A program made the translations under genes and the position numbers. The notes under the pieces are model-generated. The model was not told the origin of the DNA. It ran no database searches and saw only the letters and a list, made by a program, of their open reading frames with translations. From Anthoceros angustus (lineage: Eukaryota > Plantae > Anthocerotophyta), in contig MU008164.1 in NCBI GenBank assembly GCA_010909165.1, forward strand, positions 372,001 through 436,000: a stretch of 64,000 nucleotides of DNA, written 5' to 3'. Positions 12,166 through 56,399 of the stretch are shown one piece after another (position 1 is the first letter of the stretch; every line of letters begins with the position of its first letter).

Positions 12166-12429
12166 GGTATGAAAGACATGATGATGAAGATGAGGAAAAA
12201 TAGACCATAAGAAGTGGAAGGAGCATGGCCACATTGTATGCGAAGCGTTACAACACTTCCAAACTTTCACTTCAATCTTTTTATCCACCTGCACCCATAT
12301 CCTAGTTTATAACTTCCAAACTTTCACTTCAATCTTTTTATCCACCTGTACCCATATCCTAGGATTGATCACTCATATTTTGGCCCAAACAATATTACTC
12401 TCCTACTCGTGCATGTGCCATCGCTCCCT

Positions 12430-12770
12430 CCAGCATCCTCCTACATCCTCCTACATCCTCCCACATCCTCCCACATCCTCCCACATCTTCCCACATCCTC
12501 TTACATCCTCCCACATCCTCCCACATCCCCCCATCCCCCATCCTCCCACATCATCCCACATCCTTCCACATCCCCCCACATCCTCCCACATCATCCCACA
12601 TCCTTCCATCCCCCATCCTCCCACATCCTCCCACATCCTCCCACATCCGCCCACATCCCCCCACATCCTCCTACATCCTCCCACATCCTCCTACATCCTC
12701 CCACATCCCCCTGCAATCGCTCCCTCCCATGGCTCCCTCCACCATCCGCCTACATCCTCCCCACATAGAA
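12430..12770 (+). repeat. 10-bp tandem repeat (CCACATCCTC)n
   Basis: Directly visible degenerate array. The His/Pro-rich ORFs here are by-products of it. Confidence 0.9.
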
Positions 12771-13160: not shown

Positions 13161-13407
13161 TCTTCAGCAAACGTTCAATTCCAAATCTTTGAAAATTTTG
13201 CGGCTCACAAGCGAGTGTGAAGGAACGGGAAAGTGTAGATGTTCTCGTGGAATTAACTGGCTCAAGCTCTGGTGCAAGATGAACTAGAACTCAAACGGCA
13301 AGTGCTTTCTTGGTGCAGAGGAAGGCCTATCTATTTGTGTGAGTCCGAGACTGCGTATATCTGAGACGTCTCATGGCGAGGAGGAGAGCAGCGTCTTACA
13401 AGCCGCC

Positions 13408-22090: not shown

Positions 22091-22236
22091 CGCGGACCTT
22101 GGGCATGGATCTGCATTAGGTAACTTTCTTTCATTCACCATAAGCCTTCTCCCCATTTCCCATCGCGGACCTTGGGCATGGATCTGCATTAGGTGACTTT
22201 CTTTCATTCACCATAAGCCTTCTCCCCATTTCCCAT
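22091..22236 (+). repeat. 73-bp direct tandem duplication
   Basis: CGCGGACCTTGGGCATGGATCTGCATTAGG... starts at 22091 and again at 22164. Confidence 0.9.
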
Positions 22237-22292
22237 CCCTACACGCTTCTTTGTCCATCTAGCGTGAGGACTGTATGATAGCTTCACCTCTT

Positions 22293-22813
22293 CATGGAGT
22301 CATAGATGTCATGTAAGGAGTACATGGAGTCATAGAAGTCATGTAAGGACTACATGGAGTCATAGATGTCATATAAGGACTACATGGAGTCATAGATGTC
22401 ATATAAGGACTACATGGAGTCATAGATGTCATATAACGACTACATGGAGTCATAGATGTCATATAAGGACTACATGGAGTCATAGATGTCATATAAGGAC
22501 TACATGGAGTCATAGATGTCATATAAGGACTACATGGGTCATAGATGTCATATAAGGACTACATGGAGTCATAGATGTCATATAAGGACTACATGGAGTC
22601 ATAGATGTCATATAAGGACTACATGGAGTCATAGATGTCATATAAGGACTACATGGAGTCATAGATGTCATATAAGGACTACATGGAGTCATAGATGTCA
22701 TATAAGGACTACATGGAGTCATAGACGTCATATAACGACTACATGTAGTCATAGATGTCATATAAGGACTAACCTGCTTCACGGAGTCATAGATGTCATA
22801 TAAGGACTACATG
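22293..22813 (+). repeat. 30-bp minisatellite (~17 copies)
   Basis: CATGGAGTCATAGATGTCATATAAGGACTA repeated nearly perfectly. Confidence 0.95.
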
Positions 22814-22947
22814 ACAGCTTCACCTACTGCACAACACCTGCTTCATGGTGTTAGCAAAAATTGTCAAAGAGAAGATAGATAACATCAATCTTCCGTTTCT
22901 CCCAATCCACCGCCCTGGCTAACTGAATCTCTTCCGCCATATCGACG

Positions 22948-23502
22948 TGATAAAATATATGATTAGGGTATTATTCATTAGAGCTCCCTTAAACCCCTAG
23001 AATGAACATAATATAATTCTAAGGGCTAAAAGTAGTTTTTATTGATTAGTTAATTAGTTATTTGGTTACAACAACTTATAACCGCCTACTTCATATAGAC
23101 ATCGGCTTTTCACCTCAGTAAAAACTTCATATAGCCATCGGTTTTTCACCTCAATAAAATCTTTTCTTCATATAGACATTATGTACTTTTTATTATCTAT
23201 ATAATGTATAAGATCTTGTGAGCAATGTCTTTGATTCTCTTCATGGTATCAGAGCATACTTGCTCTCAATTTGTTCATGCAACTGCAAGCATACGTGCTC
23301 TCAATTTGTTCATGCAACTTCAAGCATACGTGCTCTCAATTTGTTCATGCAACTTCAAGCATTCTTGCTCTCAATTTGTTCATGCAACTTCAAGCATACT
23401 TGCTCTCAATTTGTTCATGCAACTTCAAGCATTCTTGCTCTCAATTTGTTCATGCAACTTCAAGCATACTTGTTCTCAATTTGTTCATGCAACTTCAAGC
23501 AT
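22948..23502 (+). mobile_element. Probable orphan LTR (~22948-23243) + tRNA-iMet PBS (23244-23255) followed by a 35-bp tandem array
   Basis: An AT-rich TG...CTCTTCA segment is immediately followed by TGGTATCAGAGC, then about 7 copies of TGCTCTCAATTTGTTCATGCAACTTCAAGCATACT. No gag-pol and no second LTR were recognised. The left boundary is inferred. Confidence 0.55.
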
Positions 23503-24794
23503 TTGAGGAGCTACTCTCCATAAAGGCGAAGAAACGTAGGACTTTGTGGAAGATCATCCTTGTGCCAATCGACTCATCGGGTTCAAGTCTTGGTGGTTTT
23601 GGGCTTGCAATATCTCGTTGAAAGTAGAATCCTTAGGGGATCCTTGTTCTATTTTTTTCATAATTTAATTTCCATACTCTGACCTCAAAAAGCTATTAAG
23701 TTCCATTTCGGTGAATCTCCTTCAAGAAATTAGCTCGGGGGGGGCCTTTGTTTAGGCGTCAAGCAACCTTCGATTGGGATGAAGTGCACGCTCCCAAGTG
23801 TTCTTGGCCTCTAATGCTTTTAATGCATCATCTTTTGTACAATCCATGATACACACCCTTGGCCTCTAGTGCTTTTAACGCACTCTCTTTTGTAGGGTCC
23901 ATGATACACACCCGTAACTTTTCTTGGCATTTAGTGTTTCTAAGGCACTCCCTTTCATGTGGTCTATGATGGATTCCTTGTCCTTGGTATTAGAAGCTCC
24001 ATAGGTTGTATGGTCCATGATGGACCCTTGATTGTAACACCCTTAGTAAGTTAAGTAATGTCTAGTTAGGGTTAAGCCAAGTGTTTCGTAGCCAAGTATA
24101 AAGTGACAAATCTAAGACCAATTTTGTAATTCAATCATTATGTAATATAGATAAGTTCATGAGTGTGTTTTGCCTCCAAATCGCAAAACAAACATAGTGC
24201 CTATAGCAATTAACCCCTAAATGACGAACATACTCATTTTGTATCGTTTTTGGTGCATTCAGTACTAGATGATTTTTTTCCTTCAGATTGACAAGGTCGC
24301 AGGTTTAAGCAAAGGTACCGAGGCCTCTGAGGAACATGTGGATTTTTGAAAGAAAACGTTTGGACAACATCTTCATGCCTTGAAGTGGCCAAGAATGTAA
24401 GATTCCACTAAGATTTTTTTCACATCGGACCGTAGCAACTCTAAGTAGTTGTGAGGGTCCATTTTTTTGTTTGGAAAATTTGTACATTATGATCAAGGCC
24501 TCAGATGGACTTGATTTTTTTGGATTGTGTACATGATGGTGTCTAGATCCCTCATGGTGAAGTTTGCTCAATGAACATTCCTGTTTTTTTTTTAATCACT
24601 TTTGGAAGATAAGCGCACGTCATCGTGGGCATGGAGGCTTAAACCGATATGGAAATTACTAGGAGAGGTATCAATAGCATCCCTTTTTTTTCCTAAGGGA
24701 CAAAGGATGTGTAAGTGACCATGGTGATAATTGCCCAAGTGAAAACATTACAAAAAGCTCTTTACAAAAAGTTCTAGTCTAACTCAGACTTTCT

Positions 24795-25157
24795 TGCAAA
24801 AAGCCCTAGCCCACCAACAAAGCCATCAGAAAAGGTATCAAGATAGAAACCATTGGAATACTTCGCAAGCCCTAGCCCATCAATAGAGCCACTAGAAAAT
24901 TCTCTTAAAAAAACAGATCCACGAAACAAGGCATCAAGATGGAGATAATGGGAACACTTTGCAAGCCCTAGCCCACCAACAGAGCCATCAGGAAAGGCAT
25001 CAAGATGGAGACTGTGGGAACAATTTGCAAGCCCTAGCCCACCAATAGAGCTATCAGGAAAGGCATGAAGATGGAGACTATGGGAACACTTTGCAAGCCC
25101 TAGCCCACCAACAGAGCCACCAGGAAAGGCATCAAGATGGAGACCATGGGAACACTA
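24795..25157 (-). repeat. 66-bp tandem repeat derived from the C-terminal codons and stop of the adjacent gene
   Basis: GCAAGCCCTAGCCCACCAA... recurs at 24961, 25027 and 25093 (66-bp period), with decayed copies near 24800 and 24866. Confidence 0.85.
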
Positions 25158-26724: not shown

Positions 26725-27003
26725 CACATATCCTTAAATAAATACTACTGTGTACCTGCGCCGACCACAGATCCTTAAATAAAAAATATTAAGAACCTAT
26801 ACCAGCTACAGATCCTTAAATAAATAATATTAGGTACCTAGGCCCATCATCTATCCTTAAATAAATAATATTATGTACCTACACCGACCACAAATCCTTA
26901 AATAAATAATATTATGTACCTGTGCTGACCACATATCCTTAAATACATAATATTATATACCTACACCGATCGCAGATCCTTAAATAAATAATATTATTTA
27001 CCT
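26725..27003 (+). repeat. 41-bp AT-rich minisatellite
   Basis: About 7 copies of ATCCTTAAATAAATAATATTATGTACCTACACCGACCACAG-like units. Confidence 0.85.
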
Positions 27004-27710
27004 ACGATTCTAGAATATTCCTTATTTATACACCCTTGGCCTTATAAGTAATCCTAAATTAGAAGAAGAAGAAGAAGAAATCTCTTTGAGTCCACTCCTT
27101 ATGTATACACCTCACCCTCCTAAACTAGAAGAAGAAGAAGTTTATTATAGTCCACTTGGACAGAATCCTAAACTAGAAGAGAAAGGAGTTTATTATGGTC
27201 CACTTGGACAAAATTTTCCTCTCATGAGACGCAGTACTTCACCATGTGTTCCATCGTGTAACTAAGCTAGAACTTGTCAGCACCATCAGCTTTGCATCGC
27301 ATTACAGGAAAGAAACGAAATTTGCCAATACCATTAGTTTGTGCATTGCATTCCAGGAAAGAAACGAGAGAACTGCACCTGGCACATCCAGGATATGACC
27401 TACTTGGTCCTGAAACCTACCACACAATTCATTCCGTGACATCAGATCCAGCTAGGGAGGCGGCGGAGGCTCTTCTTTGTACCATGAGATTGGATAATAC
27501 CCAAAACATAAATAACCATGTGTTTAGGATAACCCTATTCGTAACACCCCCCCTTAAACTCAACACATTATAGCGATTCCTTCACGCGGGCCGGTGTACT
27601 CGAGTAGAAGGCCACGGCTGGCATCGTCACGTCCCAACAGGCCTCAGCGTACACTGAGGCTTACGCTCCAAGGCCAGCTCCCAGACGCAATAAAAAGGCA
27701 CAGCTTAGAG

Positions 27711-28079
27711 ATGGCAGCCAACCTTGCTTCCATCGTGGCTGGAGCCCAACTTGTGCTCTTCACTTTCACGAGCCTGCTTAATCTAGCTATCATGAGGACG
27801 CGAAGTGGACGAAGCTATCACAGCCAGGAGACCACTAGGAAGCGAGAAGGAAGGAGAGGAATCACAAGACACAAAAATGACCGTGGCGCTATTCCATGAC
27901 CAAGGAAGGGGCACAGGAAAACACTGCTAGAGGCTGGGAATGGGACAATGTGCAATTGGGGTAGTATCTTGGCGCAGGCAACTATCACGTTCATCGATCG
28001 TCTTGGGAAAGGTGAGGAAAGAAGAGGCCGGTGCGGTTTCGGAGAGGAAGGAACACAGAGCCTTATCAAGCAGCTCGAG
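27711..28079 (+). CDS. Antisense accessory ORF of copia B, 5' part (3' part at 42252-42305, split by insertion of A)
   Basis: MAANLASIVAGAQLVLFTFTSLLNLAIMRTRSGRSY...QSLIKQLE | DTIKLLDKVKNVEP..EE*. Homologous to 32169-32636 and 54402-54806; contains indels. Confidence 0.7.
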
Positions 28080-28653
28080 TAAAGGAATAGATGTGTTGGA
28101 GTCATGATTATGGTTCATTCAGTTAAGTTATTTTAAAAGGTCATGGCGTTTCATTAGGGTTACGTCTGTTCATAAAGGCGTGGCTTTTGGTTTTACTTAA
28201 ACCATTACGAACTTTAATTGTGTGTGTATTCTTTACATATATAGTGTGATACAATGTAATACAATTATTAATCTGTATATTCCATTTATCCTAAAATGGT
28301 ATCAGAGCACATGAATATGCAGGTTGCATTTTGATTAATGCACATTGAAAAATGCATTTAAAGAGAATGCATTTGAATATAGTTTTTTTTGTTTTTTGAT
28401 TTAGAAAAATGTTTTCTTGATCAAGAAACCAAAAACTTAAAGAATACAATTTGTGTTGTTTATTTATATAGAAATTGATGCGCCCGCAAATTAAGGAAGT
28501 GATCCTCGCGCATCTTTCCTGAATTGTTATTTGAACAATTTCAGAAGAAATGCGCTAGGACAACTACCTAATCTGCAGGTAGATTGTCAAAAATATTTTA
28601 TATAAAAAATACAATGTCAAAAGAAAACATTTAACAACACAAAATCTGGCCTG

Positions 28654-31801: not shown

Positions 31802-32168
31802 TGTAAATTATCAAGCAGAAGCGAGAGGTGCATGAACTCTTGATAGTTGGATTAATTAATGAATGCAACACAAAATCATTGTTTTATCTTGACGCCGACT
31901 TGTATATGTAACCCTAATTCACATAACCCTAGTCCGAGTGACCATGTGTCTAGGTTTAACTGACCGATAACCCTATCGTAACAACCCCCCTTAAACTGGA
32001 CACATCATTCAGTTCCTTCACGCGAAGCTGGCGTACACGAGGAAAAGGTCACGGTCGGAAGTATCACGCTCCACAGCCGACTGCATCACGCTCCATCGAG
32101 GCCTAGCGTACACAGGAGCTTATGCCCCAAGGCCAGCTCTCGGAGGATAAGAGGGACGCAACTCAGAG

Positions 32169-32636
32169 ATGGCAACCAACCTTGCCTCCGTCGTCGCTAT
32201 AATCCAGCTTGCGCTCTTCGCTCTTACGAGCCTGCTCAATCTGGTGATCATGAAGACAAGGAGCGGGAAACGCTATCGCCGTGAAGACGCTCCAAGGAGG
32301 ACCAGATGGGCAGGAAACGCCCCACAGACCGGTGCAAGCGCAGAGAGCAACGCACCATCAAGCCTGCTCACCATCAGAGAAGAGCAGCAGGAAACCGCCG
32401 CCCAAGGCTGTAAGTGGGACAGGCACTGTTGGGGACAGTATGTGCACCTCGGGTGCTACCACGTAGAGTTGAACATCAGCCTGTCTCTGGGCAAGGTGAA
32501 GAAGGGAGAGACACGCGCTACCATCTCCAAAGACGCCCAGGGGGAAGAAGGAAAACAGAGCCTCATCAAGCAGCTCAAAGACACAATAAAGCTGCTAGAC
32601 AAGGTGAAGGACGTGATACCAAGGGAGGAGGAATAG
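32169..32636 (+). CDS. Antisense accessory ORF of copia C (155 aa)
   Basis: Intact ORF convergent with pol: hydrophobic N-terminus, MKTRSGKRY motif and conserved C-terminus HLGCYHVEL...GEEGKQSLIKQLKDTIKLLDKVKDVIPREEE. Homologues in B and E. Confidence 0.75.
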   Translation: MATNLASVVAIIQLALFALTSLLNLVIMKTRSGKRYRREDAPRRTRWAGNAPQTGASAESNAPSSLLTIREEQQETAAQGCKWDRHCWGQYVHLGCYHVELNISLSLGKVKKGETRATISKDAQGEEGKQSLIKQLKDTIKLLDKVKDVIPREEE

Positions 32637-32676
32637 GTTGAACCATCAGTCAGGTGATTATCTCTTGCAATATGCT

Positions 32677-35600
32677 TCATCCACTGATCAAGCTTTGGAT
32701 CACCGACCGGCTGATGTCCGTCATAGATAAGAGCGCTGCTAGGAGGGCTTCATCATAAAAACTGGAAGTGCAGGCTTCCACCCCACACCCCGCCTGCCTA
32801 CAAACCAGATAAGGCTCATCACTGCTGGAAACGGGCAGAAAATCCTCGAGCCCAAGTCCCTCCATGTGGGCATAGTGCTTTTGCTTAGATAGGCCTTTAG
32901 TCAGGATGTCTGCGGTGTTGTCCTCAGTATTGATATAACCGACTGTAATGACCCCACGTTCAACCACATCACGTATGTAGTGATGCTGGATTTCAATATG
33001 TTTAGTACGGGCGTGAAATTTCGGGTTTGCCACTAACTCAAGCGCAGACTGGTTGTCACAGAGAAGCTGCGTAGGCTGAAGTTGATGATCAAGATCAGCA
33101 AGGAAACTCCTCTCCCATTCAGCTTCTTTAGAAGCCTCTGTCAGAGACTTATATTCAGCTTCGGTGGAGCTGAGGGCAATACTCGCTTGCTTCTTACAAC
33201 TCCAGTTCACAGCTGCTGAGGCTAAAAGGAAACAGTACGTAGAAAGACTACGGCGAGAATCTTGATCTGACGCCCAGTCGGCATCGGTGTAACCTGTCAG
33301 GGTAAGCTGTGCTTTGCCACTTTGTCTGTACACCAAGCCTGTTGTATGAGTCCCCTTAAGGTAGCGGAAGATACGTTTTACAGCTGTCCAATGTGTCCTT
33401 CCAGGATTTTCCAGAAACTGGGATACTGTGCTCACAGAATATTGGATGTCGGGTCTCGTCCAGTTAGCAACAAAAATAAGGCTGCCCACCGCGTGCCTGT
33501 AAGGTACATCGCGCATATCTTCCATCTCTTCTGCAGTCTCAGGACACTGCTCTCGGGTAAGCTTGGTCCCGACTGCATAGGGGGTTGTAGCAGGACGAGC
33601 TTGGTCTAGGTTGAACTTCTTCAGTATTTCATTTACGTACTTGTACTGATGGATAATCATGAGGCCTTCGGATCTAATGCGAAGCAACTGTATGCCAAGA
33701 CAGAACTTCAACTCTCCAATATCCTTCATGTCAAACTTGCTGCTAAGTTTATTTTTGACATCTGACAGCAGCTGTTGATCATTGGTTGCGAGAATTACGT
33801 CGTCAACATACAAGGCTAAAATCACAATAGAAGACCCCACAGTGAGTTTGTAAACGTTAGTATCTGCCGTGCTCTGGACGAAAGCTATACTGAGCAAGTA
33901 TACGTGCATCGTAAGGTACCATACTCTCCCACTTTGCTTAAGTCCATAAATGCATTTCAACAACTTCAGGACTTTATTAAGGTGTTTTGGGTCTTCATAT
34001 CCCTCTGGCTGCAGCATGTAAAGTTCTTCGTCCAGGGCACCATACAAAAACGCAGTACAAACGTCCATCTGTTGAAGGTCCAAATTATGTTCTGTGGCAT
34101 AGGCAAGCAAGATCCTTATGGATTGAGTGCGTACAACTGGAGAAAAAGTGTCTTGGTAATCCAGACCCTCGACCTGGGTGAACCCGCGGGCAACTAAGCG
34201 AGCTTTGAATCGCCACCTCTCCCTTAGCATTGAGCTTGAGTTTGAATACCCATTTACAGGATATTGCCTTGCGACCCGGAGGGAGGTCTGCCAGTACCCA
34301 TGTCTTGTTCTTGACCAGTGACTGGTACTCGTCCTCAACGGCCTCTTTCCATTGTGCTGACTCAGGACCATCAAAAGCTTGAGATAAAGAGGTAGGCTCA
34401 TCTGGAAGAGATGGGCTAATAACAAGATGAGTCCGGAAATCTGTAGATTGATATGGGGGCTCTGCCCATTCGGATGGTGGGGGACGATGGCGAGAAGACC
34501 GCCTGAGCTCATCTGCAGGGGGTGCTTCTAGTGCGTGCTCTTGTTCGACTGCTTGGCCATCATGAACCTGGGCAGGTGCCTCCACAGCAAGGGGTCGATG
34601 ATCATAGTGTACAAGAGGGGGACGCTCATCAAGGATAGCATCCTGGTCAGGTTGTAATCCCTGTACAGCATTAGGAGCCTCGACAGGCTGCCAATCATCA
34701 TCACCTCTGGCAGGAGGTGGCAACTGTGGGGGAACTGCAACATGTTCCATGTCGTCCAGTGGGTAGTCGGCAGTTTCATCGGCATCCAAAACATCCAAAT
34801 GTCCATGAATGGCTCCTGGGTCGGGGGAGGATGGATCAGTGGAGGATGGATGCAGTGTCTCCGTAAAGGTTACACTACGAAAAGTACCATGGAGTCTACC
34901 TCTGGGTTGTACAACTTGTAGGCTTTAACAAGCTCACTGTAACCAACAAAGATGAGGCCTTGAGCACGAGCATCCAACTTCTTTCTCTTCTCTGGAGGAA
35001 TATGGGCATATGCTTTGGATCCAAAAATCCTCAAATGGAGCAAGCTCGGCCTCTTGTGCCAAAAGACCTCATATGGAGTCTTCTGTGGGACCGAACTTGT
35101 AAGGACCCTATTCAGGATATAGGTGTGAACTACCGCCTCGCCAAGACTTGTGGTAAGCCCATATCAGCATGCTCCTCGTCATTCCTGTGAGGGTTTGGTT
35201 TTCCTCTCTCAAAATGCCGCTTTGTTATGGGCGCAGGCACAACAATCGTCAAGGATCCCATGCTCTTGAAGCAGCTCATCAAGAGATGAGTTGACGAACT
35301 CCGACCCATTGTCTGTCCTTAAAATCTTGAGAAGCATTGTCTTCAGACCATCAAAAGCTTGAGATAAAGAGGTAGGCTCATCTGGAAGGGATGGGCTAAT
35401 AACAAGATGAGTCCGGAAATCTGTAGATTGATATGGGGGCTCTGCCCATTCGGATGGTGGGGGACGATGGCGAGAGGACCGCCTGAGCTCATCTGCGGTG
35501 CTTGTGCGTGCTCATGTTATTTGCTTGGCCATCATGAACACAGGCGGGTGCATCCGAGGCGGTCGATGATCATAGTGTACAAGAGGGGACGCTCATCAAG

Positions 35601-38062
35601 GATAGCATCCGTGGGTTGTAATCCCTGTCACATTAGGAGCCTCGACAGTCGCTAATCATCTTCACCTGCGGAGGTAACATGTAGGCGCAACATGTTCCAT
35701 GTCATCCAGTGGGTAGTCGGCAGTTTCATCGGCATCCAAAACATCCGAATGTCCATGAATGGCTCCTGGGTCGGGGGAGGATGGATCAGTGGAGGATGGA
35801 TCAGTGGGTGCTGTTGGCTCCAGAAAGGTTACACTACGAGCAAGTACCATGGAGTCTGTCTCAGGGTTATATAACTTGTAGGCTTTAACAAGCTCACTGT
35901 AACCAACAAAGATAAGGCCTTGAGCACGAGCGTCCAACTTCTTTCTCTTCTCTGGAGGAATATGGGCATATGCTTTGGATCCAAAAATCCTCAAATGGAG
36001 CAAGGTTGGCCTCTTGTGCCAAAAGACCTCATATGGAGTCTTCTGTGGGACCGAACTTGTAAGGACCCTATTCAGGATATAGGTTGCAGTAACTACTGCC
36101 TCGGCCCAGTACCCTTGTGGTAAGCCTGCCCATATCAGCATGCTCCTCGTCATTCCCAGGAGGGTTTGGTTTTTCCTCTCTGAAATGCCGTTTTGTTGCG
36201 GCGTGTAGGGCACAGTCAACTGTCGAAGGATCCCATGCTCTTGAAGCAGCTCATCAAGAGATGAGTTGACGAACTCCGACCCATTGTCTGTCCTTAAAAT
36301 CTTGAGAAGCATGCCTGATTGTCTTTGTGCAGTTAAGAGCCATTCCTTGAAGTAACTAAAGGTGTCACTTTTCATATGCATGGGGAAGGTCCAGGTGTAA
36401 CGACTGTAATCATCAGTTAGAGTAAAGAAATATCTGGAACCACCTAAAGATGGCTCATGGATCTTCCCTGATATGTCAGCGTGCACTAACTCAAGGACTT
36501 GTGTGGCTCTATGTGCAGAGGCATTAGGAAAGGGGGATTCCTTTTGCTTGGCCAGGATGCAAGATTCGCAGACTGGTAAGTCTTTAAAACATTTAGAGTG
36601 GCTCCCTGTGACACTCCATAACTGACATGTCAATTAGCTTAGATCTGTTGACATGTCCTAATCTGGCATGCCACAATACGGCCTCTTGCTTTGCACTAAC
36701 TGAATTTCTGGCAGTGGAGTGTGCAGCATGATTGGAAACAATGGCGGAGCTGCAAGTGATGTTCAATCTGTATAAATCATGGTCTAAGATACCTTTGAAA
36801 ACACATGTATCTGGGTATGCCTTTCTATAGAAAGAACAGTGATTAGAATCAACACGCATACATAAGGTACGCAGACGCATCAACTGGCTCATGGACATGA
36901 GATTTTTGGCCATGCATGGAACAAACAAACATCATCTAATCTGAGGTCTGTACTGTCCTGCAGCCTGAAGATACAGGTACCCTTGCCTTCAACGGGCAGA
37001 CTTGTTGTACTTTGCTCATCACCAAGCAGGACCTTGTCATTGACATGACCAAGGTCAAGGGTAGTAAATAACTCCCTGTCTTTGCAGATGTGAGTCGTAG
37101 CGCCGGAGTCCAGATACCAACTACAGTCATCATGTAGGGAACTAGAAAGGCAAACGGTAAGTATCTTGACCGGTGCCTTAGTTTCTCCAGGATTTTTCTC
37201 CTCGACAAAGCAAAGATTAGTTTCCTACTGCTGCTCACCGCCTTCTTTATGGCAGCCTTGCCCAATGGCTGTGGGTGCCACACCGCTTGCAAGAACCTGG
37301 ACGTTTGGTGGAGGAGCTAGCGAACGGGCCTCTGTCCAACAGAACGGGCTGTAGCCGAGTGCTCTCGAATTTGGCCTTGCCTCTGAAAGGTCGTAAATTC
37401 ACAGCTAATACTCTCTCGGTTCTGTTCTTAGGAACAGCACCGGAAAGGGTACGAGCCTGTTCCTCCTGATAGAGTGGCCGATGTCCTCAATAAGAAGTCA
37501 GCAGATCCCGAGGCTTTACAGTCCGCTTTTGAGCAAAGGATAAATTGATATGAAGGTGGGAGACTAATGAGTAGCTGGGATACAGCTTCGACTTCTGGCA
37601 TCTTGTTACCAGTCAACGAAGTGATCTGGGCCCTAAGATGTCGGAACTTGCTGGTATGAGCAGCTTCTCTCCTTCCTTCATTTTCAAAGCATAAAACGCC
37701 ATTCTTGCGGCTGATAACGACAGCATGTTGGTGGACCGATAAGTGGTTTCTAACTGGTGCCAGATAGCCTCCGCTGTGTCCAAGAACTCAATATCAGGCA
37801 CAAGATCTGCATCTAGGCCATTGATGAGGAGGGCCATAGCGACACCATTGTGGTGCATCCACTTGGCATGATCATCAGGGTGTGTGGAAGGATCAGGCTG
37901 CTTGAAAGTGCCATCGAGGACTGGCCAAACTCCACGAGCAGACATGATGGCCTTAATCCTGACTCGCCAAATGAGGTAACCATTTCCCTTAAACCGATCT
38001 TTTTCCTTCAATTCTGAAGTGAAAGATAGTGCTAGGGTCGGATGTGAATTTGACGAAGCCAT
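32677..38062 (-). CDS. Copia C gag-pol polyprotein (frameshifts probably partly assembly errors)
   Basis: Gag LKEKDRF at 38062; LWHARLGH; IN VHADISG / LRTDNGSEF / QNGISERKN; RT FKARLVARGFTQ, QMDVCTAFLYG, LYVDDVIL; RH GYTDADWA, SSTEAEY, ADILTKGL. Confidence 0.9.
34365..36312. repeat. ~980-bp tandem duplication inside copia C (probable assembly overlap)
   Basis: 34365-35337 is repeated at ~35345-36312. The first copy degrades by indels at its right end and the second at its left end. Confidence 0.75.
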
Positions 38063-38543: not shown

Positions 38544-39149
38544 TCAAAGCTGAATGGGTAAACCGTTCTCCAGACCCTGCAATCTAAGGTCCATCTTTTT
38601 CAAGATTTCAGTCAAATAATCAATATCTTGTTTGATGTCCAGTTTGCAGGCTGAGATAGCTTGTTCAGCGTTGAGAATTAGGCTGTCGACTCTGTTCCTG
38701 GTAGACTCCTGATTTGCAAGCGTTAAAGTGAACACCTTCTCCACACAATCTGAGGTAACCAGTGATCTGCCACTAGTTTGGTCCCTGAATTGTGTGGGAT
38801 TACTGATGGTGTTATCTCTTTGTTGTGGCACAGACTGTCTTGAGCAAGAGGAGGATGCCTCTGTGCTAGGTCTGAAGAATAGATTTGGATTCTGTCCTCT
38901 GTTACGGCAACGCTCCCTATACAGGCGATCCACTCCTCTATTTCTGTGGAGGAGATGAGCCGGTCCAGGAGGAGTGCTTCGCTGTGCCACAAAACGTCTT
39001 AGCCAGAGTGCAGGGTATTCGTACTCGTAGAGGTCCAGCAACGTGTCAATGGGCAACGTTGCTGTTTGCTTTCGTAGGCGACCTTCCTGATTGTAATTTC
39101 CTGGAGGTCCACCACGCCGGCTTCCTCTAGAACCACCCTGCCTCGGCAT
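38544..39149 (-). CDS. Extra 5' ORF (ORF0) of copia C (201 aa)
   Basis: Intact ORF starting 33 nt after the PBS, upstream of gag. Arg/Gly-rich N-terminus and heptad-like C-terminus (VDSLILNAEQAISACKLDIKQDIDYLTEILKKMDLRLQGLE). Confidence 0.65.
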   Translation of the reverse strand: MPRQGGSRGSRRGGPPGNYNQEGRLRKQTATLPIDTLLDLYEYEYPALWLRRFVAQRSTPPGPAHLLHRNRGVDRLYRERCRNRGQNPNLFFRPSTEASSSCSRQSVPQQRDNTISNPTQFRDQTSGRSLVTSDCVEKVFTLTLANQESTRNRVDSLILNAEQAISACKLDIKQDIDYLTEILKKMDLRLQGLENGLPIQL

Positions 39150-42100
39150 TCTTAGGAGATCTTAGCAGGAAAACAGAGCATGGCTCTGATACCATGTAAA
39201 TTATCGAGCAGAAGCGAGAGGTGCATGAACTCTTGATAGTTGGATTAATTAATGAATGCAACACAAAATCATTGTTTTATACTGACCACGCGACTGTTCA
39301 TGTATGTAACCCTAATTCACATAACCCTAGTCCGAGTGACCATGTGTCTAGGTTTAACTGACCGATAACCCTATCGTAACAGTGTTACCTTTGATGAAGG
39401 CAGCACTTGGGCATCAGTGGGAGCTTCCCAGGATCCCCCTCTTGAGGATGATGATGACACAACAAAGGCCTGTATTCAATTTGATCAAACCGATCATGGG
39501 ACTCAAGTTGTTCTACGAGGATGTTGCCCCTATGCGTGGGGATGCTCCGGCTGATGATCTTGTTGATGATTCAGCAGGTTTTGACCTTGTTGGTCTTGAA
39601 GAGCGTAGCTCGCACAACATAAGATGTACCCGACAAGCTTCATCGCCTTACGTGAGCCCGATCCAAGTTTTGTACCAGATCGGTGAGCATGGGTGCCTTA
39701 GAAGCTCACAATCTGAGTCTTCTCGTTGCTGTGTCGAGGCTTGGGGAACTTCACATGCACACTGCGGGTGGAGCCGTCATCATAGTATGCAAAATCCAAG
39801 TTCAGGACCCTGACCAGACAGGTGAACTCAACTTTTGGCGACGAAGGAAAGGGAGGAGCGCTCATATCTCGGCGAGTTCTGAAGCCTTCGACCTTGCGCC
39901 GCTCCAGAACTTCTTTTGTTGTCCCTTTCGGCCTTCCAACTCTTCGCCTGCTGGTGGACGCTTTGTTCTCAACACTCTTCTCAACCTTGGTAGTTGTCCT
40001 AGGCGCAAACCTCCCTAGGGCATCGCGCTGTTGGCGGCGGGTCTTGGGAGCGGCATCAGAATCAGAACTTGAAGAAGCCATGATTGACAGGAGGCGCGCG
40101 ACTCTACGCCTCAACAGCTCAGTAAATACTTGGGACGTGAAGAGGCTGAATGTTATGTAGGCGGCGCACCTCATCACAACAGTTTGGGCACTGGAACAGG
40201 TACTTGAAGATACCATCTTGATTCACTGTGACTTGAAAAGATGGAGCGTAACCAAGGATGTAAATCGCTATTATGGCGCTTTGAAGATTAAAGACAACCC
40301 ACCGAACTTACCATACCACGCACCCCCACCACCATGAAGACTGAATATGCAAATGAATCATGACCAACAAGTGGGAGTAAAGGAATAGATGTGTTGGAAT
40401 CATGATTAGGGTTCATTCGGTTAAGTTATTTTAAAAGGTCATGGCGTTTCATTAGGGTTACGTATGTTCATAAAGGCGTGGCTTTTGGTTTTACTTAAAC
40501 CATTATGAACTTTAATTGTGTGTGTATTCTTTACATATATAGTGTGATACAATGTAATACAATTATTAATCTGTATATTCCATTTATCCTAAAATCGAGG
40601 ACACGATCAAGCTGCTCGACAAGGTGAAAAATGTAGAGCCGAGGAGGAGTGAGCTAAACCAGAACCAGTGATTAAATTTCTCGATAGGCTTCATCCACTG
40701 CCGTTGCCAGTGCGCTGGTCGTAACTAATCGCTCGTTGTCTTCAGAAGGAGTTTTGATTGGTGAGTTATCATCAATAAACTGGAAGCATACGCCCACGCC
40801 CGGCTTCCTCTAGAACCACCACCGCCCATTCTTAGAGATCTTGGCGGGAAAAGCAGGCATGGCTCGATACCATGTAAATTATCGAGCGAGCGAGGTTATG
40901 AACTCTTGATAGTTGGATTAATTAATGAATGCAACACAAAATCATTGTTTTATATACGCGACTGCATCATGTATGTAACCCTAATTCACATAACCTAGTC
41001 CGAGTGACCATGTGTCTAGGTTTAAGCCGACCGATAACCCTATCGTAACAGTGTTACCTTTGATGAAGGCAGCACTTGGGCATCAGTGGGAGCTTCCCAG
41101 GATCCCCCTCTTGAGGATGATGATGACACAACAGTGCCTCCAGATTCCCAATTTGATCAAACTGATCATGGGACTCAAGTTGTTCCTGCTGAGGATGTTG
41201 CCCCTATGCGTGGGGATGCTCCGGCTGATGATCTTGTTGATGATTCAGCAGGTTTTGACCTTGTTGGTCTTGAAGACGCAGCTGCAGAGCCTGCACAACC
41301 AGATGTACCTGACAAGCGCTTCATCATCAGTTCTGTGAGCCCGATCCAAGTTTTGTACCAGATCGGTGAGCATGGGTGCCTTAGAAGCTCACAATCTGAG
41401 TCTTCTCGTTGCTGTGTCGAGGCTTGGGGAACTTCACATGCACCGAGCTGGCTATCATAGTATGCAAAATCCAAGTTCAGACCCCGACTGCATGTGTGAA
41501 CTCAACTTTGGCGGCGAAAGGGAGGAGCGCTCATATCTCGGCGAAGTTCAAGCCTTCGACCTTCGCCCCGAGAACTTCTTTGTTGTCCCTTCGGCCTTCC
41601 AACTCTTCGCCTACTGGTGGACGCTTTGTTCTCAACACTCTTCTCAACCTTGGTAGTTGTCCTAGGCGCAAACCTCCTAGGCATCGCGCTGTTGGCGGGT
41701 CTTGGGAGCGACATCGATCGAACTTGAAGAAGCCATGATTGACAGGAGGCGCGCGACTCTACGCCTCAACAGCTACTTGGGACGTGAAGAGGCTGAATGT
41801 TATGTAGGCGGCGCACCTCATCACAGCAGTTTGGGCACTGGAACAGGTACTTGAAGATACCATCTTGATTCACTGTGACTTGAAAAGATGGAGCGTAACC
41901 AAGGACAGAAATCGTTGGCTATGGCGCTTGAAGATTAAAGACAACCCAGCTGAACTTACAGTCCACGGGCACCCTGCAGCCGACCATGAAGACTGAACAT
42001 GCAAATGAATCATGACCAACAAGTGGGAGTAAAGGAATAGATGTGTTGGAATCATGATTAGGGTTCATTCGGTTAAGTTATTTTAAAAGGTCATGGCGTT

Positions 42101-42440
42101 TCATTAGGGTTACGTATGTTCATAAAGGCGTGGCTTTTGGTTTTACTTAAACCATTATGAACTTTAATTGTGTGTGTATTCTTTACATATATAGTGTGAT
42201 ACAATGTAATACAATTATTAATCTGTATATTCCATTTATCCTAAAATCGAGGACACGATCAAGCTGCTCGACAAGGTGAAAAATGTAGAGCCAGAGGAGG
42301 AGTGAGCTAAACCAGCAACCAGGTGATTAAATTTCTCGATAGGCTTCATCCACCTGCTGTTGCCTTGTGCGCTTGGCTGTGTAACTAACTGCTCACTGTT
42401 GTCTTCCACAGGAAGGAGTTTTGATTGCAGAGTTATCATC
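39115..42440. repeat. ~1.65-kb tandem duplication spanning C 5' LTR, A 3' end and B flank (probable assembly overlap)
   Basis: ~39115-40790 is repeated at ~40795-42440, including both insertion junctions. The copies differ mainly by small indels. Confidence 0.75.
39698..40216 (-). CDS. Antisense accessory ORF of copia A with AT-hook-like motif (duplicate copy ~41380-41864)
   Basis: 172-aa ORF read away from the 3' LTR: QQRDALGRF, RRRVGRPKGTTKE, FPKP..EKTQIVS. The same motifs occur in order in element D at 43980-44340. Confidence 0.65.
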   Translation of the reverse strand: MVSSSTCSSAQTVVMRCAAYITFSLFTSQVFTELLRRRVARLLSIMASSSSDSDAAPKTRRQQRDALGRFAPRTTTKVEKSVENKASTSRRRVGRPKGTTKEVLERRKVEGFRTRRDMSAPPFPSSPKVEFTCLVRVLNLDFAYYDDGSTRSVHVKFPKPRHSNEKTQIVSF

Positions 42441-43899
42441 AATAAAGCGAAGCACGCTTCCGCCCGCCCCTCCCCAACCCGGATAAGTCTCCATCACCGC
42501 TAGAAATAGGCAGAGAAGTCTTCCAGCCCAAGTCCCTCCATGTGTGCATAGTGCTTTTGCTTAGATAGGCCTTTTGTCAAGATGTCCTCAGTGTTGTCAT
42601 CTGTACTTACATGGCCAACTTTGACAACACCACGCTCAACCACATCAGGGATGTAGTGATGCTGGATTTCTATGTGCTTAGTACGAGCGTGAAATTTCGG
42701 ATTGGCCACTAACTCAAGTGCTGATTGGTTGTCGCCAAACAGCGGTGTAGGTTGGAGTTGTGCTTGATCCAGGTCACTAAGGAAACTCCTCGCCCACTCA
42801 GCTTCCTTAGAAGCTTCGGTCAAAGACTTGTATTCAGCTTCGGTGGAGCTGAGGGCAATAGACGCTTGCTTCTTACAACTCCAGGTGACAGCTGCAGATG
42901 CGAGCAAAAAACAATATGTAGACAAACTGCGGCAGGAATCTTGATCGGAAGCCCAGTCGGCATCTGTGAAACCTGTTAGGGTAAGTTGTGATGTTCCACT
43001 TTGTTTATACATCAATCCTGTTGTGTGTGTGCCCTTGAGATAACGGAATATTCGTTTGACTACTATCCAGTGAGGCCTACCAGGATTTTCAAGGAACTGA
43101 GACAGCGTGCTGACTGAAAATTGTATATCCGGCCTTGTCCAGTTGGAAACAAAAATAAGGCTCCCAACTGCATGCCTGTAAGGTATGTTTTTCATATCCT
43201 CTGTCTCCTCTGTTGTTGTTGGGCACTGAAGTCGAGTTAGCTTGGTTCCTACAGCATAAGGTGTAGTGGCTCGGCGCGCCTGGTCCAGGTTAAACTTCTT
43301 GAGGATCTCATTGACATATTTGTACTTGTGAAGGATCATTAACCCTTCAGACCTTAAACGAAGCAGCTGTATACCAAGGCAAAACTTCAACTCCCCAATA
43401 TCTTGCATATCAAACCTGAAGATTTTATGGTCTAATGTAGATCAATTAAACATTATAGAATAATTACATTGTTGGATCAAGAAAGAAGTAAGTTGCTTAT
43501 GCATGAAAAGACAACTAAACTAGATTTAATGAAACGTTGTATCTATTCACTTAGAGACGTAACCCTAATGAAACGACACCATATCTAGTAAACCCTAGCT
43601 TATCATATCTTGGTAATATATGGATAACTTAAACCCTAAACCCTAACTATGATATCAACATTGTATATCATTACTCCCACTTGTTGTAAATAGTTAGGTA
43701 CAAATTCTCACCGTGAACCGCTCGTGAGACTCTGGAGTTGAGCTCCTTTGCCAATCTTCCGGTTTTGCCATCTTGTGGTGGTAGAGCTTACGCCCCATCT
43801 TCATGTCTTTACGGACACTATGGAGTGTACCAAAGTGTGAAGCCACCGAGTGTGTTGGCTCCCTTTATAATTCTCCTTACGCCTCGCCTCATATGCATC

Positions 43900-53990: not shown

Positions 53991-55848
53991 TGTGAAGTAT
54001 CATTACATAATCATTTGCTAGATTTGACTATAGCTAAGAGGTTTAGGCGGTACACACAAACATGTGTATCCGTAATGAATTAATTGAACATATCAAAAAG
54101 GTCTCATATGTGTTCATTAAATAGCCAAACCCTAAAACAAAAAGGTATATCTAAATATGATAAGTTAAGCTAATGGCAGCAACCCGTAACACCTCTTAAG
54201 CTCATGTTTAAGCAACTAACAACAAGCCCAAGATCATCCTAAAGCAAACCCTTCGTAAACGAAAGCGGTACGCGATCCACGTAAAAGCGCTCATGCACCG
54301 GACGACTCAAACTCATAGCTTCTGCCACTCCGCATCGCGGCTTGAGTAGCCCAACAACCTCCACTCGCAGCCCGAAGAAGAATAAGGCTGTTACCGGAGC
54401 CATGGCTAGTAACCTTGCCTCTTTGATCACGGAGCTGAATCAGCTGGTTTCCTGCATACATCTTCTCGCGGTGCGCCATGAAGACTGGCAAGGCGTGATA
54501 AGGATTTTAATCGAGGAAAACAGGAAGAATAAGATACCACCTGCCAAAACAATGTTTACGAGCTTTGGACAAGAGGCGTGCCACGCCGGGGGGACTACAA
54601 GACGTGGGCGGAGGATTCACTTGGGTGCCTACCACATGGAACTGAGCGTGAACCTAATATGGGGAAAGGTGAAGCGAGGGGAGACTCCTAATTTGCCTTT
54701 GTACGCTATTGGGGTGGAAGGGAAACAGACCTTGATCAGCCAGCTGGAGGACACCATTGAAATGCTGGACAGAATTAAGGACGTGATGCCGAGAGAGGAG
54801 GAGTGAAGGCCGAACCAAACAGCCAGGTGATTAGATGCTGAACTGGAGCTCCATCCAACCTGGTTTGTCAGGGTTTTCAAGTAACTTATAGCTGTGTGAT
54901 GTATCTGGGCAGGAGGAACATAGATGGAGAGCATCACAATAAACTCAGGATGTGGTCATCCGGAACCCCCTCTCACACAGATAAGAGTTACTTAGTTCTG
55001 CTCATAGGCTGTGAAATCAATAAGCCCTAGGCCTTCCATATGCCGGTAGTGTAGATGCTTGGGAAGGCCCTTTGTAAGGATGTCCGCCGTATTTTCATCT
55101 TGGAACATGGCGATCTTTATAATACCGATGAACCACATCTCTAATATAGTGATGTTGAATTTCAATGTGTTTCGTGCATGAAATTTAGGATTTGCAACAA
55201 GCGCAAGAGTGGACATGTTGTCACATAGAAGTGGCCTGGCTTGCTGCTGCCCCAAATCCAAAAGGTTCAGATCCACTGCCTCCTTAGAGGCCTGTCGACT
55301 CTTGTACTCGGCCCCGCTGACGAGAGGGCAACCGATGTTTGTTTCTTGCAGCCCAGCTTGGTGACAAATGAGGAGAGGAGAAAACAATATGTAGAAAGGC
55401 TTCGACGTGATTCTCGTGTCCGATGCCCAATCAAGATCTGAAGCCTTCAACAAAAGTTTCCCGCCGGCCCAGTTGCTTCGTATGCTAGTCCATAGGATCG
55501 AAAATTTTAGGTAGCGGAAGACACGCTTACCGCCAATGAACTCGGCCTGGATTTTCCAGAAATTGGGATAGGGTGCCGATCAATCGGATGTCCGCCTTGT
55601 CCAGCTAGCTATAAAAATTAAGCTTCCTATGGCATGCCCGTAAGGGACCTGTGCCATCTCTCACCTCGTCGCACCTTGTGGACATTGACTAGTGAGCTTA
55701 GTCCCTACAAGATATGGTGTAGTAGATGGCCGGCATGTTCAAGCTTAAACTTATGTAGCAGTTCTTGAACATATTGATACTGATGAATGATGATCAACTT
55801 CTCAGGTCTGACCCTTAGTAACTGAATGCCAAGGCAGAAACGTAGCTC
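53991..55848 (-). mobile_element. Ty1/copia element E, 3' part (B/C lineage)
   Basis: LTR inner end ...CCCGTAACA (54191) plus CCTCTTAAG. RT/RH remnants at 54992-55848 (ELRFCLGIQLLR, VANPKFHAR, ADILTKGL). Left LTR boundary inferred. Confidence 0.75.
54402..54806 (+). CDS. Antisense accessory ORF of copia E
   Basis: MASNLASL...(ATG AAG ACT GGC AAG at 54478)...HLGAYHMELSVNLIWGKVKRGET...GVEGKQTLISQLEDTIEMLDRIKDVMPREEE*. Confidence 0.7.
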   Translation: MASNLASLITELNQLVSCIHLLAVRHEDWQGVIRILIEENRKNKIPPAKTMFTSFGQEACHAGGTTRRGRRIHLGAYHMELSVNLIWGKVKRGETPNLPLYAIGVEGKQTLISQLEDTIEMLDRIKDVMPREEE

Positions 55849-56399
55849 ACAACACGATAAAGTTGCAAGGGGGTGAATATACAGGAAGGGGGTTTTCTGT
55901 ACAATATACACCAAAGGGGGTTTCCAATGGGTTGGGAATCAGTGATCCACTAAACCGTGCAATTTCACACCGAAAGTAGGGTGTGCACCCGAGTAAGCAT
56001 CGGTTTCATGGACCCACGGTGTGTGCATGGTATTAGGAAAGGCACACTGTGGAAGTGTCGAAATAGAGCCCATTAACTTCTACCAGCCGGTCAATCGAAC
56101 AAAGAGTTGGTCATTCTAGAATTTGACACCATGGTGGGCCTCAAACCCTATGCATCATGTCCCTGCACTGTGAAACTTGAGAGGGTATGAATGACACGGA
56201 AAGGGTGGTAGAAATCATCCCTATATATGCAACTTTCACATTTTATGGGCGCTTGGTGCCGGCCGCCACGGCTTACACTGGGCAAAGCGACGTTGTACCC
56301 ACAACGATTGATAGTCGCAATCGCATATTAAGGCGAGATTCGCGCCGCTTTGCCGCTTGTCAAACTTCCAACCGTGGTTTCAATCAGAAACACAATTAT

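What the first reader, a model, noticed from the sequence alone, without database searches (positions are those of the whole stretch)
32169..32636. Antisense protein family 1 is conserved at amino-acid level in three diverged elements (B, C, E)
The C-termini align with conservative substitutions and a shared stop position. C: GEEGKQSLIKQLKDTIKLLDKVKDVIPREEE*. E: GVEGKQTLISQLEDTIEMLDRIKDVMPREEE*. B: GEEGTQSLIKQLEDTIKLLDKVKNVEP..EE*. The N-termini are MATNLASV / MASNLASL / MAANLASI, and C and E share HLGxYHxEL. The three LTRs have diverged strongly and the ORF lies outside pol, so the conservation is not a shadow of pol. K/R, V/I and L/M swaps imply selection on this frame. I recognise no domain.
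Basis: seen in the sequence. Interest (0 to 1): 0.8.

Follow-up and report, generated by a model that had tools for sequence, protein, structure and literature searches.

The report
Antisense accessory gene in copia retrotransposons
A small, previously uncatalogued protein gene sits backwards between the polymerase gene and the end repeat of several diverged Ty1/copia retrotransposons. It has been kept by selection, as in the antisense extra genes known from gypsy-type plant elements and some retroviruses.

Summary
ORF 32169-32636 (+, 155 aa) lies tail-to-tail with the pol gene of a minus-strand Ty1/copia element, 40 bp beyond its stop, between pol and the polypurine tract and 3' LTR. Homologous ORFs occupy the same position in element E (54402-54806) and element B.

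B is a dead copy.

An exhaustive HMMER search of 1.84 billion proteins found one relative, P0121, on a Logan contig (L004) with the same LTR/PPT-ORF-pol layout.

Codon tests favour the plus frame:
- ML omega is 0.20 (LRT against omega=1 is 78).
- All six pairs show a third-position excess.
- The rival minus frame gives omega 0.40, has no conserved start and has a stop in L004.

There is no Pfam, PDB or fold match. The protein has an N-terminal hydrophobic helix, a variable linker (absent in L004) and a conserved C-terminal domain of about 65 aa.

Best reading: a lineage-specific antisense accessory gene, comparable to the aORF-3R of Grande, RIRE2 and Retand elements (all Ty3/gypsy) and to HBZ/ASP of retroviruses. 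Its function is inferred, not shown. It is a new member of a known kind, of moderate interest.

The parts
32169..32636 (+). Antisense accessory ORF, copy C (155 aa, intact). It has an N-terminal hydrophobic helix (res ~5-31), a variable basic/disordered linker (res ~34-88) and a conserved C-terminal domain (res 89-155).
31997..32168 (+). Leader and putative promoter region of the antisense gene. Blocks are conserved with B and L004 (ATTCCTTCACG, TTACGCTCCA). The start context CAGAGATGGC (A at -3, G at +4) is seen in C, B and L004; E has GAGCCATGGC, i.e. G at -3 and G at +4.
   Evidence: the promoter role is inferred, not shown
31984..31996 (-). Polypurine tract of element C (minus strand ..TTTAAGGGGGGT, next to the LTR start TGTTAC..)
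   Evidence: the same junction occurs in B (27546-) and in L004
31802..31983 (-). 3' LTR of element C (182 bp). Its 5' counterpart at 39195-39381 is about 93% identical.
32651..32683 (+). Conserved non-coding motifs just after the ORF stop: CAGGTGATTA (32651-32660, resembles a 5' splice site) and GCTTCATCCA (32674-32683). They are present in C, B/D2 and E, and in shortened form in L004.
   Evidence: role unexplained
32677..37119 (-). pol of element C (Ty1/copia order: integrase, then RVT_2, then RNase H), with an internal ~0.97 kb tandem duplication (34366-35337 / 35346-36312)
39183..39381 (-). PBS (complement of GCTCTGATACCA, tRNA-iMet type) and 5' LTR of element C
54402..54806 (+). Copy E of the antisense ORF (134 aa from the conserved ATG; the open frame extends upstream to 54342). 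E's pol (minus strand, ~55058-55900) is broken by several frameshifts and stops.
27711..28079 (+). Copy B, left piece (N-terminus to ..QLE). It has an in-frame stop at 27897-27899 and ends at the target duplication TCGAG of the nested element G.
42252..42305 (+). Copy B, right piece (last 17 codons plus stop), contiguous with B's pol (minus strand, 42554-43417)
40600..40653 (+). Duplicate of B's right piece inside the 1.66 kb tandem duplication 39112-40779 / 40794-42446; frameshifted

Best explanation
The ORF is a real protein-coding accessory gene of one lineage of Ty1/copia LTR retrotransposons. It is encoded on the strand opposite gag-pol, in the short interval between the end of pol and the polypurine tract and 3' LTR.

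Shown:
- The position and orientation are the same in four diverged elements: three in the window and one on an unrelated public contig.
- The frame has been under purifying selection while the elements diverged to saturation at synonymous sites.
- The product has a three-part build. An N-terminal hydrophobic helix is followed by a basic cluster. A linker of variable length and sequence follows, and is dispensable because it is absent in L004. Last comes a conserved C-terminal domain of about 65 aa (HLGxYHxEL ... GKVK[KR]GE[TS] ... GKQ[ST]LI ... amphipathic helix ... acidic tail).

Inferred:
- The gene is transcribed antisense to the element from a promoter in the PPT-proximal leader or the 3' LTR, as shown for maize Grande gene23 and HTLV-1 HBZ.
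- The protein acts in trans on the element's own life cycle.
- My preferred mechanism is a small signal-anchored membrane protein whose C-terminal helical domain faces the cytosol. It would bind an element or host partner and so regulate particle assembly or trafficking, or copy number, much as HIV-1 ASP is a small hydrophobic antisense-encoded membrane protein. This last step is a guess, with perhaps 25-30% confidence. The stated confidence applies to 'selected antisense accessory protein gene of the element'.
For: - Layout: pol sits on the minus strand with RVT_2, and integrase precedes RT. The ORF stop is 40 bp from C's pol stop, and the PPT/LTR junction is 185 bp upstream of the ATG.
- Copies: hits to C, E, B and the B tail occur only at the same relative position.
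- Outside relative: one hit, P0121, at E=1e-7 among 1.84 billion proteins. Its contig L004 has the LTR/PPT junction, an ATG about 100 bp later, the conserved N-terminal helix and the C-terminal domain, then copia pol on the opposite strand. That pol is 78% identical to C's.
- Selection: Nei-Gojobori omega is 0.15 for C against E and 0.17 for C against B in the plus frame. The ML codon model gives omega 0.20, with LRT 78.4 against omega=1. Every pair has a third-position excess, including the two independent contrasts C-B (p=0.04) and E-L004 (p=0.02). The shuffle test gave 0 of 5000.
- Architecture: the Kyte-Doolittle 19-residue maximum is 2.34, 1.89 and 1.81 for C, B and L004. AF2 predicts helices at 5-31 and 126-147 and a two-helix C-terminal domain at pLDDT 62.
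- Start context: A at -3 and G at +4 in C, B and L004; E has G at both positions.
- Precedent: antisense aORFs between pol and the 3' LTR, with their own promoters, are documented in PMC7264820 and PMC11963269.
Against: - No expression data of any kind are available, whether transcript, ribosome footprint or peptide.
- Only four lineages exist, and two carry inactivating changes: B has a stop and a nested insertion, L004 has an in-frame TAG.
- Synonymous sites are saturated (pS 0.65-0.85), so omega is imprecise.
- The codon alignment was guided by the plus-frame translation, which slightly favours that frame.
- Non-synonymous divergence is 2-4 times that of pol (dN 0.34 against 0.08 for C-B).
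- E's N-terminal helix is below the membrane-helix threshold (1.39), so the membrane anchor is not universal.
- Structure models are of low confidence (pLDDT 38 and 62), and nothing ties the protein to a known activity.
- Copia relatives with 60% pol identity from the same sample (L001-L003) and more distant ones (L005, L007, L008) show no detectable homologue.
Confidence: 0.72

Rival explanations
1. The conservation reflects a cis-acting nucleic-acid element of the retrotransposon, and the open frame is incidental. Candidates are an RNA structure or signal near the PPT and pol end, or an antisense regulatory RNA that feeds siRNA production.
For: The non-coding flanks are also conserved. The leader is 73% identical between C and B. 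Two motifs after the stop are shared by all copies. Antisense transcripts of LTR elements can act as RNA (PMC7264820).
Against: The substitutions show period-3 bias in one frame only, with omega 0.20 against about 1 or more in the four unrelated frames. The ATG, the stop region and the reading frame are kept across length changes. RNAalifold on the element's sense strand gives a weak consensus (-11.4 kcal/mol over 288 columns) with no favourable covariation term. Rfam finds nothing. An RNA role could coexist with coding but cannot replace it.
Confidence: 0.06
2. The selected frame is the sense-strand small ORF that overlaps the C-terminal part (32456-32680 and 54629-54937, minus strand). The plus-strand ORF would then be its shadow.
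For: That frame is open in both C and E over the shared region and ends at the homologous position. Its omega is below 1 (0.30-0.40).
Against: It is the frame whose wobble positions coincide with those of the plus frame, so a reduced omega is expected as a shadow. Its omega is two to three times that of the plus frame. Its shuffle test is weak (31 against 24.8 identities, p about 0.02, compared with 0 of 5000 for the plus frame). It has no conserved start: the ATG is in frame only in C and D2. It has a stop just upstream in L004. It covers only the last ~59 codons, whereas the N-terminal block is also constrained in the plus frame. Its product is a low-complexity Ser/Leu/Phe string, typical of the complement of Lys/Glu-rich coding. 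Its shared end is a by-product of the conserved Tyr codon.
Confidence: 0.03
3. The ORF is a decaying relic, for example a fragment of host sequence captured by an ancestral element. It would no longer be under selection and would be open in C and E by chance.
For: B and L004 are disrupted. The middle third is hypervariable and absent in L004. No homologue exists elsewhere. E keeps the ORF although its pol is dead, which shows that intactness in a single copy says little.
Against: Neutral decay since a common ancestor old enough to saturate synonymous sites (pS ~0.7) would leave no alignable protein. Instead the blocks keep 43-60% amino-acid identity, with pN less than half of pS in every pair. 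Captured genes are typically found in one or a few copies, not in diverged families (PMC7264820).
Confidence: 0.08

Closest known systems
Antisense additional ORFs between pol and 3' LTR (aORF-3R) of plant Ty3/gypsy elements: maize Grande gene23, rice RIRE2, Silene Retand (TRP28 domain), Phaseolus ORF2 families
   Same: Position (between pol and the PPT/3' LTR) and orientation (opposite to gag-pol). Presence across diverged families with protein-level conservation. No similarity to cellular proteins of known function. A presumed own promoter (PMC7264820, PMC11963269, PMC4093653).
   Different: The host element here is Ty1/copia. Every described case I could find in the searched literature is Ty3/gypsy of the Tat/Retand group, or the fungal gypsy element Boty. 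The protein is much smaller (about 110-155 aa against 200-900 aa). The pol-to-LTR interval is about 0.7 kb, against 3-6.5 kb in Retand. There is no TRP28 or SMC-like domain (Pfam). The N-terminus is hydrophobic and anchor-like, rather than the nuclear, DNA-binding character suggested for Grande and Retand.
Retroviral antisense proteins: HTLV-1 HBZ, HTLV-2 APH-2, HIV-1 ASP
   Same: The gene lies on the minus strand at the 3' end of the provirus and is transcribed from the 3' LTR side. ASP is likewise small and hydrophobic or membrane-associated (my own knowledge; HBZ and APH-2 as summarised in PMC11963269).
   Different: No sequence or fold similarity and no bZIP. HBZ and ASP overlap or abut env/pX, whereas here the ORF overlaps no sense-strand gene.
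env-like ORFs of SIRE-type Ty1/copia elements
   Same: An extra ORF between pol and the 3' LTR of a copia element, with a predicted membrane-spanning segment.
   Different: Those ORFs are in sense orientation, 380-700 aa long, and read from the genomic or spliced sense RNA (PMC4093653, PMC7264820). This one is antisense and four to five times smaller.

Membership tests
Antisense aORF between pol and 3' LTR of LTR retrotransposons (aORF-3R; a positional class, not a homology family) | Lies between the end of pol and the PPT/3' LTR | tested here: met
   LTR 31802-31983, PPT 31984-31996, ORF 32169-32636, pol stop 32677-32679. The same order is seen in B, E and L004.
Antisense aORF between pol and 3' LTR of LTR retrotransposons (aORF-3R; a positional class, not a homology family) | Opposite orientation to gag-pol | tested here: met
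   The ORF is on the plus strand and pol on the minus strand in C, B and E. In L004 the ORF is plus and pol minus.
Antisense aORF between pol and 3' LTR of LTR retrotransposons (aORF-3R; a positional class, not a homology family) | Present in diverged copies or families, with protein-level conservation | tested here: met
   Four lineages, omega 0.20 with LRT 78. Pol is 73-86% identical between lineages C, B and L004.
Antisense aORF between pol and 3' LTR of LTR retrotransposons (aORF-3R; a positional class, not a homology family) | Antisense transcript from its own promoter | not testable with these tools
   No expression data. Only a conserved leader and a favourable start context were seen.
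Retand/Grande-type aORF protein families (TRP28, PF04195; SMC-like ORF2) | Sequence membership in the domain family | tested here: not met
   Pfam scan of C, E and the B pieces: no family at E<=0.01. The profile search of 1.84 billion proteins found only P0121.
Ty1/copia LTR retrotransposon (host element) | RVT_2-type RT, integrase upstream of RT, LTRs, tRNA-iMet PBS, PPT | tested here: met
   Pfam RVT_2 at 2e-63. tblastn against P0109 gives domain order aa 17-473 (integrase side) then 523-1049 running 37119->32878.
Retroviral antisense proteins (HBZ bZIP / ASP) | Homology, or a bZIP domain | tested here: not met
   No Pfam, PDB-sequence or Foldseek match. The resemblance is positional and functional only.
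Signal-anchored / single-pass membrane protein | One hydrophobic helix of about 19 or more residues above the Kyte-Doolittle threshold of 1.6, flanked by basic residues | tested here: inconclusive
   C 2.34, B 1.89 and L004 1.81 pass; E at 1.39 fails. No dedicated predictor or localisation data were available.

The most novel reading that the evidence does not exclude
A clade of Ty1/copia retrotransposons evolved its own antisense-encoded, membrane-anchored accessory protein. This would be a copia counterpart of HIV-1 ASP or HTLV HBZ that controls the element's particle trafficking, copy number or evasion of host silencing. It would be the first such gene described for the Ty1/copia (Pseudoviridae) superfamily, and a protein family with no relatives outside these elements.
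Probability: 0.2. Interest if true: 0.7.

Novelty: new member of a known kind. Interest (0 to 1): 0.45.

Why it matters
Antisense extra genes of LTR retrotransposons are widespread in plant gypsy elements, but none has a demonstrated function. This case is small, compact (0.47 kb) and cleanly separated from pol. It shows measurable purifying selection and sits in the other superfamily, Ty1/copia. That points to convergent acquisition of antisense accessory genes at the same site in gypsy elements, copia elements and retroviruses. Its size and simple three-part build make it a tractable candidate for localisation and interaction studies. It also shows that annotating TEs as 'gag-pol only' misses selected genes.

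Tried and rejected
1. Intron reading. The 221-bp block separating B's 'QLE' from 'DTIKLL' first looked like an intron (GAG|TAAAGG ... AAAATCGAG|GAC). I rejected this. The block is the LTR of a nested plus-strand copia element: a tRNA-iMet PBS directly follows one copy, a PPT precedes the other, and a 5-bp target duplication TCGAG flanks them.
2. Word search with the full 155-aa ORF found nothing. It was recovered by the exhaustive search. A short-domain word search added nothing more.
3. The search for related loci in the viral, prokaryote-genome and metagenome collections found no relatives.
4. An LTR/PPT-junction DNA probe in metagenomes returned six loci. Three are distant copia elements whose PPT lies about 60 bp after pol, leaving no room for the ORF.
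5. The flanks of the 60%-identical pol relatives L001-L003 show no significant similarity, even when read through stops with X. L003 has only an architectural echo.
6. Pfam, PHROGs, PDB sequence search and Foldseek/PDB found nothing. AF2 models have low confidence.
7. Host identification failed. An exact look-up of a window host protein was not on record, and the run accession appears in no paper.
8. RNA-structure alternative: RNAalifold was weak and Rfam empty.

Procedural note. The in-frame stop was masked only in the alignment and codon rows. This was done only to count substitutions. No repaired, consensus or ancestral sequence was built or is given here. Consensus lines printed by the alignment tools were not used.

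Full report
**What is there.** The window is a nest of Ty1/copia LTR retrotransposons beside a few host genes. Those host genes include a DUF4291 protein, a metacaspase-like protein, a mitochondrial carrier and a TPR protein.

The finding's ORF runs 32169-32636 on the plus strand, with an ATG start, 155 codons and a TAG stop. It belongs to element C, which lies on the minus strand. The parts of C are:
- 3' LTR at 31802-31983.
- Polypurine tract at 31984-31996 (minus strand TTTAAGGGGGGT, next to the LTR start TGTTAC).
- pol running from 37119 down to its stop at 32677-32679. Pfam gives RVT_2 at 2e-63, and integrase precedes RT as in copia.
- PBS TGGTATCAGAGC and 5' LTR at 39183-39381.

The ORF is therefore antisense, tail-to-tail with pol and 40 bp from its stop. 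It lies wholly in the 0.7 kb between pol and the PPT. The conserved part of pol ends about 200 bp away.

**The copies.** tblastn and a family HMM over all six frames find relatives only at the same relative position in other elements.

Copy E is at 54402-54806, 134 codons from the conserved ATG. It is intact although E's pol is riddled with frameshifts and stops.

Copy B begins at 27711 and has an in-frame stop at 27897-27899. At 28079 it is interrupted by a nested plus-strand copia element G:
- G's 5' LTR is 28080-28296, followed directly by the PBS.
- G's 3' LTR is 42030-42246, preceded by a PPT.
- TCGAG is duplicated on both sides.

B resumes at 42252-42305, next to its own pol at 42554-43417. 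A 1.66 kb tandem duplication (39112-40779 / 40794-42446) gives a second, frameshifted copy of B's tail at 40600-40653.

What looks like an intron is an LTR.

**Relatives elsewhere.** Pfam gave nothing. The word search with the whole ORF also gave nothing.

The family scans and the word search had left the protein open, and the claim rests on absence of relatives. I therefore ran the exhaustive HMMER search with a profile of the window copies. Among 1.84 billion representatives it found one hit, P0121 (69 aa, E=1e-7). P0121 had been invisible to because of that search's length window.

Its contig, L004 (Logan assembly of run SRR33208241, 2080 bp), repeats the whole layout:
- The same LTR/PPT junction (GTAACACCCCCCCTTAAACT).
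- An ATG about 100 bp later, in the same CAGAGATGGC context.
- A homologous N-terminal helix.
- An in-frame TAG at the codon aligned with C's Gln-90, followed directly by the conserved C-terminal domain.
- A copia pol on the other strand, 78% identical to C's.

L004 lacks the middle ~55 residues of C altogether.

Further searches added nothing. A DNA probe for the LTR/PPT junction recovered only more distant copia elements, whose PPT follows pol by about 60 bp. Relatives with 60% pol identity from the same run have no detectable homologue. The gene is therefore specific to a narrow lineage.

**Is the plus frame selected?**
- For C against E over the last 66 codons, differences fall 21/15/36 on codon positions 1/2/3. 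Nei-Gojobori omega is 0.15 with no stops.
- For C against B over 62 gapless codons, the differences are 12/8/22 and omega is 0.17.
- Shuffling alignment columns never reached the observed identity or BLOSUM score (0 of 5000).
- With four copies and 120 codon columns (the N-terminal and C-terminal blocks), an ML codon model gives omega 0.20. Fixing omega at 1 costs 39 log-likelihood units (LRT 78.4).
- The same alignment read in the other frames gives omega 1.1, 3.2, 1.0 and 2.6. The minus frame that shares wobble positions with the plus frame gives 0.40.
- All six pairs show the third-position excess. This includes the two phylogenetically independent contrasts, C-B and E-L004.

It is open in C and E. 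However, it has no conserved start, has a stop in L004, encodes a Ser/Leu/Phe low-complexity string, and ends where it does because of the conserved Tyr codon of the plus frame. It behaves as a shadow.

For scale, pol of C against B has omega 0.045 and dN 0.08, while the ORF blocks have dN 0.34. The accessory protein evolves several-fold faster than pol but is clearly constrained.

Caveats: synonymous sites are saturated, the alignment was guided by the plus-frame protein, and there are only four lineages.

**The protein.** It has three parts.
1. MA-x-[NH]-LA-[ST], then a hydrophobic helix of about 25 residues, followed by [KRQ]TRSG and, in C and B, further basic residues. The Kyte-Doolittle 19-residue maxima are 2.34, 1.89 and 1.81 in C, B and L004, but 1.39 in E.
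2. A linker with no conserved sequence or length, absent in L004.
3. A domain of about 65 residues: HLGxYHxEL, GKVK[KR]GE[TS], G-x-x-GKQ[ST]LI, an amphipathic helix (DTIKLLDKVKD in C) and an acidic end.

AF2 on the full protein is poor (pLDDT 38) and shows only the two terminal helices. The C-terminal domain alone reaches pLDDT 62 as two helices. Foldseek and sequence searches of the PDB return nothing.

**How it probably works.** What is shown is a selected protein-coding frame, antisense, in a fixed place in the element.

By analogy with the documented cases (Grande gene23 with its own promoter, HTLV-1 HBZ from the 3' LTR; PMC7264820), I infer an antisense transcript that starts in the leader or 3' LTR.

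I further infer that the product is an element-specific accessory factor. From the hydrophobic helix followed by a basic cluster, I prefer a signal-anchored membrane protein with its conserved domain facing the cytosol, acting on particle assembly or trafficking or on copy-number control. That last step is a hypothesis with no direct support here. E's weaker helix counts against it.

A purely RNA-level role does not explain the codon periodicity. RNAalifold and Rfam give it no support.

**Comparison with what is known.** Antisense additional ORFs between pol and the 3' LTR are an established class in plants: Grande, RIRE2, Retand with the TRP28 domain, and fifteen Phaseolus families. Boty carries one in fungi. 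All of these are Ty3/gypsy elements (PMC7264820, PMC4093653, PMC11963269). My literature searches found no Ty1/copia example, but the library is not exhaustive.

The present gene meets the positional definition of the class. It fails membership of any of its protein families.

I therefore file it as a new member of a known kind: a new protein family, in the other superfamily of LTR elements, and unusually small. The extra ORFs described so far for copia (SIRE env-like) are sense-oriented and much larger.

**Housekeeping.** Nothing in the window looked human. No spliced model was needed once the 'intron' proved to be an LTR. In one search B's two pieces shared one alignment row; the stop was masked only in the alignment and codon rows, and the unmasked joined translation was printed in that call's output. 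This was for counting substitutions only. The host organism and the organism behind SRR33208241 could not be identified.

Noticed in passing
window 32651-32683; also 42320-42350 (D2), 54825-54855 (E), L004 ~475-500: Two short motifs just after the ORF's stop are conserved in all copies: CAGGTGATTA (CAGGTAAGC in L004), which resembles a 5' splice donor on the plus strand, and GCTTCATCCA. L003 has GGTAAGCTT at the analogous place. Their role is unknown; polyadenylation or splicing of the antisense RNA, or a signal on the sense RNA, are possibilities.
   Followed up: partly
L003:1734-1931 (minus strand of the locus): In a copia relative with 60% pol identity (same Logan run), the PPT/LTR junction is followed 58 nt later by an antisense ATG. 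It opens a 66-aa frame with 'MA', a hydrophobic helix and an Arg-rich cluster. This is the same build as the family's N-terminus, but with no detectable sequence similarity (BLASTP and HMM negative).
   Followed up: partly
window 39701-40216 (minus strand): The nested plus-strand copia element G has its own 172-aa ORF antisense to it, between its (deleted) pol and its 3' LTR. It is basic and unrelated to the family studied here. It is intact only in the D1 copy of the tandem duplication and frameshifted in D2.
   Followed up: partly
window 39112-40779 and 40794-42446: A 1.66 kb tandem duplication (90% identity) spans C's PBS and 5' LTR, G's tail and 3' LTR, and B's ORF tail. C has no matching target-site duplication (CAGGA on one side, GTGTT on the other), and G lacks its RT. 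Together these suggest recombination or deletion after nesting.
   Followed up: partly
window 34366-35337 and 35346-36312: An internal tandem duplication of about 0.97 kb (89% identity) lies inside the integrase/RT region of element C's pol.
   Followed up: no
window 43417-43673 and 49875-50133: A 257-bp direct repeat pair at 98.5% identity. These are the LTRs of a young element (about 6.7 kb, minus-strand integrase fragment near 46978-47277) inserted into B's pol.
   Followed up: no
window 12379-12751, 22179-22861, 23218-23538, 24766-25154, 26729-27056: Several tandem-repeat arrays with periods of 10, 30, 35, 66 and 41 bp. The 41-bp array lies just outside B's 3' LTR region.
   Followed up: no
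window 540-1343 (-), 7684-8592 (-), 13339-13884 (+), 16822-17388 (+): Apparent host genes with long uninterrupted exons: DUF4291 (2e-63), a caspase-domain/metacaspase-like protein, a mitochondrial carrier and TPR repeats. The host was not identifiable with the tools.
   Followed up: partly
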